Source: Camelus ferus
Lineage: Eukaryota
Direction of reading: 5' to 3'
Assembly: GCF_009834535.1 (NCBI RefSeq)
Contig: NC_045705.1
Location: 67,208,001 to 67,272,000 of the forward strand
Length of the DNA: 64,000 bases
This document shows positions 56,801 through 58,679 of the stretch, piece after piece; within the stretch, counting starts at the first letter, position 1, and each line of letters opens with the position of its first letter. Under the pieces are notes generated by a model. The model was not told where the DNA came from, did not search any database, and saw only the letters and a list, made by a program, of their open reading frames with translations. A program made the translations under genes and the position numbers.

Positions 56801-58002
56801 GCAGGCTGTCCAAGCGGTACAGCTCTTCAGCTGTGCCCACGTTCCAGATGAGCACCACGTTGTCGCAGCCTGCCGGGCGGGGGGCCATCAGCCCACCAGG
56901 CCCGCTCTGACCACCCTCCTGGGACCAGACCCTGCACTCCACCTCTGTGGGCCTCAGCCTTCCCGGGTGTCGGATGGGTCTGGGAGAGGGTGGGGGGTGT
57001 TCCGGAGCTGTGTGTGGCAAGGGGTGGGGTGGGAGCAGCGGTGCAGACCTGCGCTGAGCAGCACGTTGCGGGCCGTCGGGTGCCAGGTGATGATGCCTAC
57101 ACGCTTGGTGTGCCCCTCCAGCACCACCACCGGCTCCGTCAGCGGGGAGGACAGCCCGTTCTCTGGGATCTGCCACACCTAGGGAGGGGTGGGGAGGTCA
57201 GCTGAGGCCTCTGCTTGGCCCGGCTGCCAGGAGCCTTGAGCCACACTTGTGACCCCAGCCCAACCACAGCCCCACGCCTCACCATGACTGTGCAGTCCTC
57301 CGAGCCACTGGCGATGACTTCGTCATTGTGGGGACACCAATCAATGTCCAGGACAGGTCCTGTGTGTCCACACACTGTTGGGTAGGCCTTGTCAATGCGG
57401 CCCGTCTGTAGGCACGAGGTGGGCAGTTAAGGTGGATCTAAGATGACCAGGCTCCATCCTTCCCAGAGCTTTAGTCTCCCCTCCCCTCCATGGAGGTGAA
57501 ATGATGCAATTGCCCTGGCCCACAGGTGGACCACTTATGACTCTCACTCTGCGTCTACCTGACCCACCTCTTCCTGACAGGTATCACCAGGTGAGCAGGA
57601 AATCTTTGTTGCCTCTGACCCTGATTCTGCAGCAATAAAAGACTGTCTCCATCTGAGTTAACACCTCCCAGGCAGTAAATCTGGATTACAACACTGGTCC
57701 AGCAGTGTGGGGATGGTCAAATTATGGGTTGTGAAGTGAGCAGAGAGGCCTGGCAGGTGAGACCAGGCTGCCTCCAGCCTTTCCCCAGTCCCAATGGGGC
57801 CCACCTTGCTTAGGGGGAGTACCAGGAAGGCGCCCCCACCGCTAGCTTCCACAATCACCGCCAGGAACTTGGGGTTGACGGTGCAGAAGGTGCTGTCCCA
57901 GGTGACACGGGACACTCGTATGTCCTCATAGCACTGGTCATTCTTGACAGGCTGCCCGAACACATGCCGGAATTTGCTCTGCCGAACTACTTTGCGGAAC
58001 AT
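53808..58002 (-). CDS. CORO1B: Coronin-1B; exon 6 lost in an N-gap, +1 frameshift in exon 10 as assembled, Ser2 codon absent
   Basis: Coding exons 58002-57805, 57405-57283, 57178-57049, 56869-56688, [gap 56467-56606], 55829-55725, 55643-55498, 55258-55201, 54373-54094 (280 nt), 53933-53808. [16 protein letters not shown]...WD repeats...[12 protein letters not shown]...[15 protein letters not shown]...MENGDA*. Confidence 0.95.
56467..56606. other. Assembly gap (140 N) covering CORO1B exon 6
   Basis: On the minus strand the gap is preceded by the acceptor ccttgcag| and followed by (g)tgaggg. Confidence 0.9.
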
Positions 58003-58679
58003 GACTGCAGGATAGAGAAGCAGGGGTCAGCCTCCACCCATCCCAAGACCATCCCAAGAAGCCCCAACCCTCCCAAGCTGCCTGAAGAGAGGTGGGGAGG
58101 ATGCAATAGGGGGCATCGGCATTATAACCACCTGGCTGTCAGTTTCCCCAGTTACAGAAAAGGATCCCTGCACAGATCTGGCTGCCTCTCCCCAAGGGGT
58201 ATCTGAAGGTGGAAATGCATTGACCTCAGGCCTACACTGCTGAGTCCTCAGGGGCTTTGCAGGACCCAACCTGGGGCCCCTCCCAGGTACTGGTATGTGT
58301 ATGGAGGAGGTGTGAGGTGCTGAAGCCAGAGCAAGCTTAGCTCCTCTGTGGGTCCTAGTCAACTCCCAACAGTCTCCTTCCTGCGCAGAATTTGGAGGCC
58401 AGGTAATGGGGAGGACAGACAGAAATGGTCTCCGCTGTGGGACCGCGCTCAGCCCCAGTTCTGGGTCCCACGGAATGTGCAGTGCCTGCAGGAATACGCA
58501 GTGAGCCCCAGACCAGCCTAGGAGACCTGGCAGGGACTTAGTGGGGGTCAGGACGTCGCTCCCAGCCACAGAGCATCCCCGAGAGTCCTCAGAGCGGGGT
58601 CCAAGGTGAACCAGGAGCGCAACTTCCAGGGATTCTGGCCCAGGAGGGGAGAGGCTATGCGGCCAAGGGGAGCTGGGAC

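What the first reader, a model, noticed from the sequence alone, without database searches (positions are those of the whole stretch)
57985..58010. CORO1B lacks Ser2, its PKC/Slingshot phospho-switch
Seen: minus strand ctgcag|TC ATG TTC CGC AAA GTA GTT gives MFRKVVR. The coding part of this exon is 198 nt, and non-coding exon 1 supplies no upstream ATG. Known: mammalian coronin 1B begins MSFRKVVR; PKC phosphorylation of Ser2 weakens Arp2/3 binding and is reversed by Slingshot-1L. A clean 3-nt loss is less typical of sequencing error than single-base indels. Inference: a constitutively unphosphorylatable coronin 1B in this lineage, also with altered N-terminal processing (Met-Phe keeps the initiator Met).
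Basis: partly seen in the sequence, partly recalled or inferred. Interest (0 to 1): 0.75.

Follow-up and report, generated by a model that had tools for sequence, protein, structure and literature searches.

The report
Ungulate and whale coronin-1B lacks Ser2
The camel gene for the actin regulator coronin 1B really lacks the codon for serine 2, the residue that protein kinase C phosphorylates in human and mouse. The same 3-base loss is shared by camels, deer, pig, hippo and whales, so a whole mammalian order has gone without this switch since before its lineages split.

Summary
Confirmed. On the minus strand the first coding exon of CORO1B (58002-57805, 198 nt) reads ctgcag|TC ATG TTC CGC AAA = MFRKVVRQ.

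It is not an assembly slip and not special to this genome, a Bactrian-type camel 99.9% identical to a Camelus ferus scaffold.
- **Shared haplotype.** DNA of C. ferus, dromedary, red deer, hippopotamus, gray whale, narwhal and four further cetacean read-assemblies all shows cag|TC ATG TTY CGC. Pig, Kogia and Tursiops proteins also start MFRK.
- **Outgroups.** Rhinoceros and desman DNA reads cag|AC ATG TCC TTC. More than 200 retrieved CORO1B sequences, from lamprey to primates, keep MSFRK/MSFRR.
- **Origin.** The deletion plus an A>T change at -2 arose once, on the artiodactyl stem. The star-nosed mole has an apparently independent copy of the deletion.

No upstream exon can restore the serine.

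By the known rules Met-Phe keeps its initiator Met, so the mature N-terminus has the same length, with Met in place of Ser. An S2A-like, PKC-insensitive, WISp39/Slingshot-uncoupled protein is inferred, not shown.

I found no paper noting this.

The window also carries a private 1-base insertion in a later CORO1B exon. No sequencing run supports it, so it is an assembly artefact.

Earlier notes of this scan touch only the frameshift artefacts.

The parts
58000..58002 (-). CORO1B start codon ATG. It is the first AUG of the mRNA if transcription starts at the putative exon 1.
57997..57999 (-). Codon 2, TTC (Phe). The ancestral TCC (Ser2) codon is missing between 58000 and 57999.
   Evidence: rhinoceros and desman have ATG TCC TTC at the aligned place
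58003..58010 (-). Splice acceptor ctgcag plus 2 nt of 5'UTR (TC). The T at -2 is the artiodactyl-specific state; outgroups and Condylura have A.
57805..58004 (-). First coding exon (2 nt UTR + 198 nt coding) = residues 1-66, DUF1899 signature. The actin-binding Arg (human R30) is R29 here.
   Evidence: numbering from PMC3339874
58808..58890 (-). Putative non-coding exon 1 (5' end approximate) in a CpG-rich, ETS-motif promoter, with donor ccccg|gtaagc. It holds no ATG.
   Evidence: The boundary is inferred and was not checked with RNA reads.
57283..57405 (-). CORO1B coding exon 2, canonical AG/GT.
57049..57178 (-). CORO1B coding exon 3.
56688..56869 (-). CORO1B coding exon 4.
56467..56606 (.). 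Run of N where the next coding exon (about 40 residues) should lie.
55725..55829 (-). CORO1B coding exon 6. It starts ENFGEP and carries the only other artiodactyl-specific substitution (human E256 to G).
55498..55643 (-). CORO1B coding exon 7.
55201..55258 (-). CORO1B coding exon 8.
54094..54373 (-). CORO1B coding exon 9 (unique region). It holds an extra C at 54185 that shifts the frame as assembled. The extra base is private to this assembly.
53808..53933 (-). Last coding exon (coiled-coil trimerisation motif) with stop TAG at 53810-53808.
51209..52099 (-). PTPRCAP, the downstream neighbour. The synteny identifies the locus as CORO1B rather than CORO1C or CORO1A.

Best explanation
**Shown.** This is the intact, expressed CORO1B orthologue of a Bactrian-type camel. 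It carries an old, fixed, in-frame 3-bp deletion of codon 2 (TCC, Ser) together with an A>T change at position -2. All five main artiodactyl lineages share this haplotype: camels, pig (protein only), ruminants, hippopotamus and whales. The nearest outgroups lack it, so it arose once on the stem of Artiodactyla. By general knowledge, not computed here, that is roughly 55-65 million years ago. The rest of the exon is almost invariant, so the gene stayed under purifying selection.

**Inferred from established rules.**
- Translation starts at the same AUG.
- Phe at position 2 blocks methionine aminopeptidase, so the initiator Met is retained and is probably N-acetylated by NatC.
- The mature N-terminus is then (Ac-)Met-Phe-Arg-Lys instead of (Ac-)Ser-Phe-Arg-Lys: the same length, but with no hydroxyl for PKC.

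**Inferred from human and mouse mutant data.** At this site the protein should behave like the S2A mutant.
- Arp2/3 binding cannot be released by PKC phosphorylation of residue 2.
- There is no pSer2-dependent docking of the WISp39-Hsp90-Slingshot complex.
- If PKC input to coronin 1B persists in these animals, it must pass through another residue or another protein.
For: **Sequence and gene model.**

**Identity of the genome.** It is 99.9% identical to a C. ferus scaffold and 99.2-99.5% to dromedary.

**MFRK proteins.**
- Sus scrofa: four entries from the protein database.
- Cetaceans: Kogia, Monodon, Tursiops, Eschrichtius.
- Camelus ferus.

**DNA alignment of 11 loci.** cag|TC ATG TTY CGC is seen in three camels, Cervus elaphus, Hippopotamus, Eschrichtius, Monodon and a cetacean Logan contig. 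cag|AC ATG TCC TTC is seen in Ceratotherium and Galemys.

**Further independent read-level assemblies.**
- Four cetacean SRA runs.
- A cervid contig, whose PTPRCAP is 99% identical to Cervus elaphus.

**Tree.** An ML tree of about 4.4 kb of the gene gives rhino,(camel,(cervid,(whales))) with all nodes at 98% support or more.

**Conservation elsewhere.** 213 retrieved sequences have SFRK and 4 have SFRR. They cover horse family, rhino, carnivores, bats, primates, rodents, afrotherians, xenarthrans, marsupials, platypus, birds, reptiles, amphibians, sturgeon, bichir and lamprey.

**Expression.** RNA runs hold 31-74% of the words of 57700-58300, where the exon alone accounts for about 30%. RNA runs also hold the later exon.

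**Known biology.**
- PKC phosphorylates Ser2 and weakens Arp2/3 binding.
- S2A binds Arp2/3 more strongly and does not bind WISp39 or SSH.
- SSH dephosphorylates coronin 1B (PMC4384738, PMC9170525).
- iMet is fully retained before Phe, and Met-Phe is a NatC substrate (PMC4692089).
Against:
- Exon 1 and the transcription start are inferred, not mapped.
- An in-frame ATG at 59210 is open through the exon 1-exon 2 splice. Gene predictors give N-extended isoforms in narwhal and dolphin, so a minor isoform in which MFRK is internal cannot be excluded. It would still lack the serine.
- Coro1C naturally lacks Ser2 and still binds Arp2/3 (PMC3339874). Ser8 (human Ser9, RQSKFR) also sits in a basic context. 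The functional loss may therefore be buffered or relocated.
- No bovid or other suiform DNA was seen directly.
Confidence: 0.8

Rival explanations
1. Assembly or sequencing artefact: the real camel gene reads ATG TCC TTC and three bases were dropped in this assembly.
For: This assembly does contain errors. Three private 1-bp insertions lie within 10 kb, and other notes of the scan report many frameshifts.
Against: The sequence is identical in two other camel assemblies and in seven other artiodactyl sources, each with the linked T at -2. Fourteen runs hold 100% of the words of the surrounding 601 bp. The same test drops to 0.81 in every run where the assembly really is wrong.
Confidence: 0.01
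2. The start is mis-assigned: the protein begins in an upstream exon or at another AUG, so MFRK is internal or a serine-bearing N-terminus is supplied by alternative splicing.
For: An in-frame ATG at 59210 has an open frame through the exon 1 donor. N-extended predicted isoforms exist in narwhal, dolphin, cats and marmoset.
Against: - The putative exon 1 has no ATG for about 400 nt.
- The AUG aligns with the experimentally used start of human and mouse coronin 1B.
- Any isoform that uses this exon still lacks the Ser codon, because it is missing from the exon itself.
- DUF1899 begins 3 residues after this Met, as in all type I coronins.
Confidence: 0.04
3. The deletion is real and old but functionally near-neutral. 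PKC control of the Arp2/3-coronin axis is kept through another coronin 1B residue, through Coro1A or Coro1C, or was never essential in vivo, so the protein does not behave as a gain-of-binding S2A allele in these animals.
For: - Coro1C lacks Ser2 and still binds Arp2/3 (PMC3339874), and Coro1B and Coro1C are largely redundant in fibroblasts (PMC9170525).
- Fish coronin-1C-like paralogues start MFRR, MIRR or MLRR.
- The same deletion seems to have occurred a second time in the star-nosed mole, which suggests it is tolerated.
- The predicted mature N-terminus keeps its length.
Against: - Ser2 is otherwise invariant in CORO1B from lamprey to human, which argues for function.
- S2A and S2D have clear, opposite phenotypes in cultured cells (PMC4384738).
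- No compensating new Ser/Thr is shared by artiodactyls. The only other shared change is E256G.
Confidence: 0.35

Closest known systems
Human/mouse coronin 1B (CORO1B), regulated at Ser2 by PKC and by Slingshot-1L/WISp39
   Same: Orthologue. It has the same locus (GPR152-CORO1B-PTPRCAP-RPS6KB2) and the same exon structure. Sixty-four of the 65 residues after the missing Ser are identical in the first coding exon. It has the DUF1899 signature, WD40 propeller, unique region and coiled coil, and the actin-binding Arg is present.
   Different: Codon 2 (Ser) is deleted, so the PKC/Slingshot phospho-site does not exist. The initiator Met is predicted to be retained and NatC-acetylated, instead of removed with NatA acetylation of Ser.
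Engineered coronin 1B S2A (non-phosphorylatable mutant)
   Same: No phosphorylatable residue at the N-terminus. This is the best experimental proxy: it binds Arp2/3 more strongly, does not bind WISp39/SSH, and raises cell speed when over-expressed (PMC4384738).
   Different: S2A loses its iMet and exposes (Ac-)Ala. The natural form is predicted to expose (Ac-)Met-Phe, a bulkier hydrophobic N-terminus. S2A was studied by over-expression in cells that also have wild-type protein.
Coronin 1C (CORO1C), a type I paralogue that naturally lacks Ser2
   Same: It starts M-R-R-VVRQSKF with no Ser2, yet still interacts with Arp2/3 (PMC3339874). This is a precedent for a type I coronin working without this switch.
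   Different: It is a different gene with a second actin-binding site and other regulation. Its N-terminus is one residue shorter still.
Teleost coronin-1C-A-like proteins starting MFRR/MIRR/MLRR
   Same: The Met-Phe-Arg start is followed by the same [13 protein letters not shown] signature.
   Different: They are paralogues, not CORO1B. The basal fish 'coronin-1B-like' proteins (sturgeon, bichir) keep MSFRR.

Membership tests
CORO1B orthologue (type I coronin) | N-terminal coronin signature (DUF1899) followed by a WD40 beta-propeller and the conserved C-terminal extension | tested here: met
   DUF1899 E 1.6e-32 on the window exon. WD40 and WD40_4 match on the camel protein model, which is 100% identical to the window in the exons compared.
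CORO1B orthologue (type I coronin) | C-terminal coiled-coil trimerisation motif | tested here: inconclusive
   Trimer_CC matches the last exon (E 3e-4, below the curated cut-off because only 41 residues were given). As assembled the exon is out of frame because of the extra C at 54185. That base is absent from two other camel assemblies and from all runs.
CORO1B orthologue (type I coronin) | Conserved synteny: PTPRCAP and RPS6KB2 downstream, GPR152 upstream | tested here: met
   (PTPRCAP at 52099-51209). Searches show the same order in mole, camel, rhino, desman, narwhal, hippo, deer and dromedary.
CORO1B orthologue (type I coronin) | Closest sequence relatives are annotated coronin-1B, not 1A/1C/6 | tested here: met
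   (top hits are coronin-1B of mammals). PDB coronin-1B scores 133 bits, against 1C at 119, coronin 6 at 110 and 1A at 110.
CORO1B orthologue (type I coronin) | Surface arginine needed for F-actin binding (human R30) | tested here: met
   ...[10 protein letters not shown]..., with Arg at position 29 because of the missing residue. The role of the residue is from PMC3339874.
Ser2/PKC-switched coronins (Coro1A and Coro1B as described in human and mouse) | Serine at position 2 in an S-x-R/K context, phosphorylated by PKC | tested here: not met
   codon 2 is TTC (Phe), and there is no Ser or Thr before residue 8.
Ser2/PKC-switched coronins (Coro1A and Coro1B as described in human and mouse) | PKC-dependent weakening of Arp2/3 binding, and Slingshot/WISp39 binding to the phospho-form | not testable with these tools
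   Needs biochemistry on artiodactyl protein. Only human and mouse data exist (PMC4384738).

The most novel reading that the evidence does not exclude
An entire mammalian order (cattle, sheep, deer, pigs, camels, hippos, whales) runs its lamellipodial Arp2/3-cofilin cycle with a coronin 1B locked in the unphosphorylated, Arp2/3-bound, WISp39/Slingshot-uncoupled state. PKC control of branched-actin turnover would then have been rewired to another node in these animals. Their cells would be natural 'S2-null' models, and the retained Met-Phe N-terminus would add NatC-dependent or N-degron-type control that other mammals lack.
Probability: 0.25. Interest if true: 0.65.

Novelty: new variant of a known kind. 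Interest (0 to 1): 0.5.

Why it matters
Ser2 is the one regulatory site of coronin 1B with a worked-out circuit: PKC switches it on, and Slingshot-1L with WISp39/Hsp90 switches it off. The circuit links Arp2/3 branching to cofilin activation at the leading edge.

In the sequences retrieved here the residue is otherwise invariant from lamprey to human. Its clean removal in all even-toed ungulates and whales has been tolerated since the order's lineages split, while the rest of the protein stayed constrained. That is a natural experiment on how essential the switch is in vivo.

It also has practical consequences.
- Phospho-PKC-substrate or anti-pSer2 read-outs cannot work on this site in bovine, porcine, ovine or camelid cells.
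- Results on coronin 1B regulation from human and rodent cells should not be carried over to livestock cells without testing.
- Residue numbers shift by one (R30 becomes R29).

Tried and rejected
2. **A 60-mer centred on the junction in the run index.** It held too few sampled words. The second search went to the frameshift region instead.
3. **Finding ruminant CORO1B among protein cluster representatives.** None are representatives, and the clusters are heterogeneous. I solved this indirectly by fetching the DNA next to PTPRCAP of red deer and hippopotamus. No bovid or peccary DNA could be reached, because those proteins are UniRef-only and have no contigs.
4. **A single deletion that also explains the -2 A>T change.** Rejected. 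No 3-nt deletion of the ancestral CAGACATGTCCTTC gives CAGTCATGTTC, so these are two changes. Condylura has the deletion but not the -2 change, and so counts as independent.
5. **A compensating new phosphorylatable residue shared by artiodactyls.** None found. Only E256G is shared.
6. **Literature.** No paper in the held library mentions the artiodactyl N-terminus or the peptide MFRKVVR. Cai et al. 2005 and 2007 are not held, so their content is cited through PMC4384738, PMC3339874 and PMC9170525.
7. **Pseudogenisation of camel CORO1B, suggested by the frameshift at 54185.** Rejected as an assembly artefact.

Full report
**Observation.** On the minus strand the window reads ...ctatcctgcag|TC ATG TTC CGC AAA GTA GTT CGG....
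- From the ATG at 58002 to 57805 there are 66 open codons: [66 protein letters not shown]. A GT donor follows.
- The Pfam coronin N-terminal signature DUF1899 begins at residue 4 (E 1.6e-32).
- The remaining coding exons follow on the same strand with canonical splice sites, down to a TAG at 53810-53808.
- One exon lies under the run of N at 56467-56606. I left it unfilled.
- PTPRCAP lies just downstream at 52099-51209, as it does next to CORO1B in every other mammal fetched.

**Upstream region.**
- A CpG-rich promoter with ETS-like motifs ends in a good donor, ccccg|gtaagc at 58808.
- This putative non-coding exon 1 has no ATG. The nearest upstream ATG on this strand is at 59210, about 400 nt further up.
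- That ATG is in frame and open through the splice. It would only add an N-terminal extension in transcripts that start far upstream.
- Such extended isoforms are predicted by gene finders in narwhal, dolphin, cats and marmoset.
- Whatever 5' exon is used, the serine codon is missing from the shared exon itself. Alternative splicing therefore cannot restore it.

**Which genome this is.**
- A Camelus ferus gene model (a CORO1B-PTPRCAP fusion prediction) is 100% identical to the window in several exons.
- Its scaffold is 99.90% identical to the window over 11.8 kb.
- A dromedary scaffold is 99.2-99.5% identical.

The window is therefore a Bactrian-type camel.

**Is the deletion real?**
- The 141 bp around the start codon are identical in the independent C. 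ferus assembly, and the start region is identical in the dromedary.
- Fourteen DNA runs from seven studies and two organism labels hold 100% of the sampled 31-mers of 57700-58300. Several RNA runs hold 31-40%, which is about the exon's share of that stretch.
- I could not lay reads. The 60-mer centred on the junction contains fewer than two indexed words. Read-level proof of the junction in this species is therefore still missing.

The same index gives an internal control.
- In the penultimate coding exon the window has an extra C at 54185 that shifts the frame.
- Both other camel assemblies lack it.
- All 20 holder runs listed (the rest listed show 0.00), DNA and RNA alike, hold exactly 0.81 (17 of 21) of the words of 54090-54290. 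That is what one private base difference predicts.
- Two more private 1-bp insertions lie at 53720 and at 48849. The latter is the 'RPS6KB2 frameshift' noted earlier in this scan.
- Other notes on this genome list many such frameshifts, and one was already shown to be an assembly error.

So this assembly makes single-base insertion errors, the index detects them, and the start-codon region shows none.

**How far the deletion extends.** Protein searches seeded from the exon and from full-length relatives gave these results.
- MFRK starts: four Sus scrofa entries, Kogia breviceps, Monodon monoceros, Tursiops truncatus, Eschrichtius robustus and Camelus ferus.
- MSFRK: 213 retrieved sequences, and MSFRR in 4 more. 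They include donkey, rhinoceros, carnivores, bats, primates, rodents, lagomorphs, elephant, sloth, armadillo, marsupials, platypus, birds, squamates, turtles, amphibians, sturgeon, bichir and lamprey.

I then fetched DNA and aligned the start region of 11 loci.

| Reading at the start | Sources |
|---|---|
| cag\|TC ATG --- TTC (TTT in deer) CGC AAA | window, C. ferus, dromedary, red deer, hippopotamus, gray whale, narwhal, a cetacean read-assembly |
| cag\|AC ATG TCC TTC CGC AAA | rhinoceros, Pyrenean desman |

- Three further cetacean contigs from other SRA runs also read MFRK.
- So does a contig whose PTPRCAP is 99% identical to Cervus elaphus.
- A maximum-likelihood tree of about 4.4 kb of the gene gives rhino,(camel,(cervid,(whales))) with 98-100% support at every node.

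Camels are the first branch of the order, and camels, pig, ruminant, hippo and whales all share both the deletion and the linked T at -2. The simplest history is one event on the artiodactyl stem. The date of roughly 55-65 million years is from general knowledge and was not computed here. Bovids and peccaries were not seen directly.

**A second occurrence.** The star-nosed mole (Condylura cristata) protein and scaffold also read ATG TTC. It keeps the ancestral A at -2, and its relative the desman keeps TCC. Taken at face value this is an independent repeat of the same 3-bp loss. It rests on one older assembly and was not checked with reads.

**What it probably does.**

*Known biology, from papers.*
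- PKC phosphorylates coronin 1B on Ser2, which weakens Arp2/3 binding.
- S2A binds Arp2/3 more strongly and raises cell speed.
- Only the phospho-mimic S2D binds WISp39 and Slingshot, and Slingshot dephosphorylates coronin 1B (PMC4384738; also PMC9170525).
- Coro1A shares the site. Coro1C lacks it and still binds Arp2/3 (PMC3339874).

*Processing rules.*
- The initiator Met is removed before Ser and fully retained before Phe.
- Ser N-termini are NatA substrates, and Met-Phe is a NatC substrate (PMC4692089).

*Inference.*
- The artiodactyl protein keeps its Met, so its mature N-terminus is (Ac-)Met-Phe-Arg-Lys-Val-Val where other vertebrates have (Ac-)Ser-Phe-Arg-Lys-Val-Val. The length is the same, with Met in place of Ser. 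MAFFT indeed aligns the artiodactyl Met with the others' Ser.
- With no hydroxyl at that position, PKC cannot release the protein from Arp2/3 through this site, and the pSer2-dependent WISp39-Hsp90-Slingshot complex cannot form on it.
- I therefore expect S2A-like behaviour at this site.

This last step is not shown. The main rival is that the loss is buffered or relocated.
- Coro1C works without Ser2, and Coro1B and Coro1C overlap in function (PMC9170525).
- Ser8 sits in a basic RQSKFR context.
- An alignment of six artiodactyl against eighteen other CORO1B proteins shows only one other artiodactyl-specific change, E256G in ENLEEP to ENFGEP, and no shared new Ser/Thr.

**Comparison with what is known.** The gene passes every test for being the CORO1B orthologue: domains, synteny, nearest relatives and the actin-binding Arg, now R29. 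It fails the defining feature of the Ser2/PKC-switched coronins. Functionally its nearest described relatives are the engineered S2A mutant and the paralogue Coro1C. Fish coronin-1C-like proteins that start MFRR show that a Met-Phe-Arg start is compatible with the fold.

**Novelty.** The sequences are in public databases, but searches of the held literature found nothing on it. The terms tried were coronin 1B with Ser2 and conservation, CORO1B with Cetartiodactyla, the peptide MFRKVVR, and bovine or porcine with Ser2. I rate it a new natural variant of a known protein and known switch. It is real, old and order-wide, with an untested but clearly testable functional prediction.

**Verdict.** Interest is moderate at 0.5.

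Noticed in passing
window 54185 (minus strand, CORO1B penultimate coding exon 54373-54094): An extra C (GCCTGC[C]AGCGG) shifts the frame, so that the coiled-coil exon would be misread. It is absent from the C. ferus and dromedary assemblies. All 20 holder runs listed (DNA and RNA) hold exactly 17 of 21 words of 54090-54290, so it is an assembly artefact and not a truncated camel coronin 1B.
   Followed up: yes
window 48849 and 53720: Two more single-base insertions are private to this assembly, relative to both other camel assemblies. 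The one at 48849 lies in RPS6KB2 exon 10 (the frameshift noted earlier in the scan) and the one at 53720 in the CORO1B 3'UTR. That makes three in about 10 kb, which points to a systematic 1-bp insertion error in this assembly.
   Followed up: partly
L002:3001 (Condylura cristata scaffold JH655892.1): The star-nosed mole CORO1B also reads ATG TTC (no Ser2) but keeps the ancestral A at -2. Its relative Galemys keeps ATG TCC TTC. This looks like an independent recurrence of the same 3-bp deletion. It rests on one 2012-era assembly.
   Followed up: partly
window 55829-55812 (minus): ENFGEP replaces the ENLEEP of other mammals. Gly at human position 256 is the only other substitution shared by all six artiodactyl CORO1B proteins compared and absent from 18 other mammals.
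   Followed up: no
window 59210 (minus) to 58808: An in-frame ATG has a 134-codon Pro/Ala-rich open frame that runs through the putative exon 1 donor into the CORO1B start. This probably explains the N-extended 'isoform X1' predictions in several mammals. It is unlikely to be translated if the transcription start is near 58890.
   Followed up: partly
window 57882-57880 (minus): Camel CORO1B has Thr41 (TFCTVNP) where all other retrieved CORO1B proteins have Ala (TFCAVNP). The C. ferus model shares it.
   Followed up: no
L003 (Camelus ferus KB016535.1), protein P0396: The deposited C. ferus 'coronin-1B' (669 aa) is a fusion model. It skips the last CORO1B exon and reads on into PTPRCAP, which is an annotation artefact.
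   Followed up: no
window 59127-59170 (minus), CORO1B promoter: A GCCCCT hexamer repeat upstream of CORO1B differs by 12 nt between this camel and the dromedary. Several further small indels between the two species cluster in the GC-rich promoter (58867-59004).
   Followed up: no
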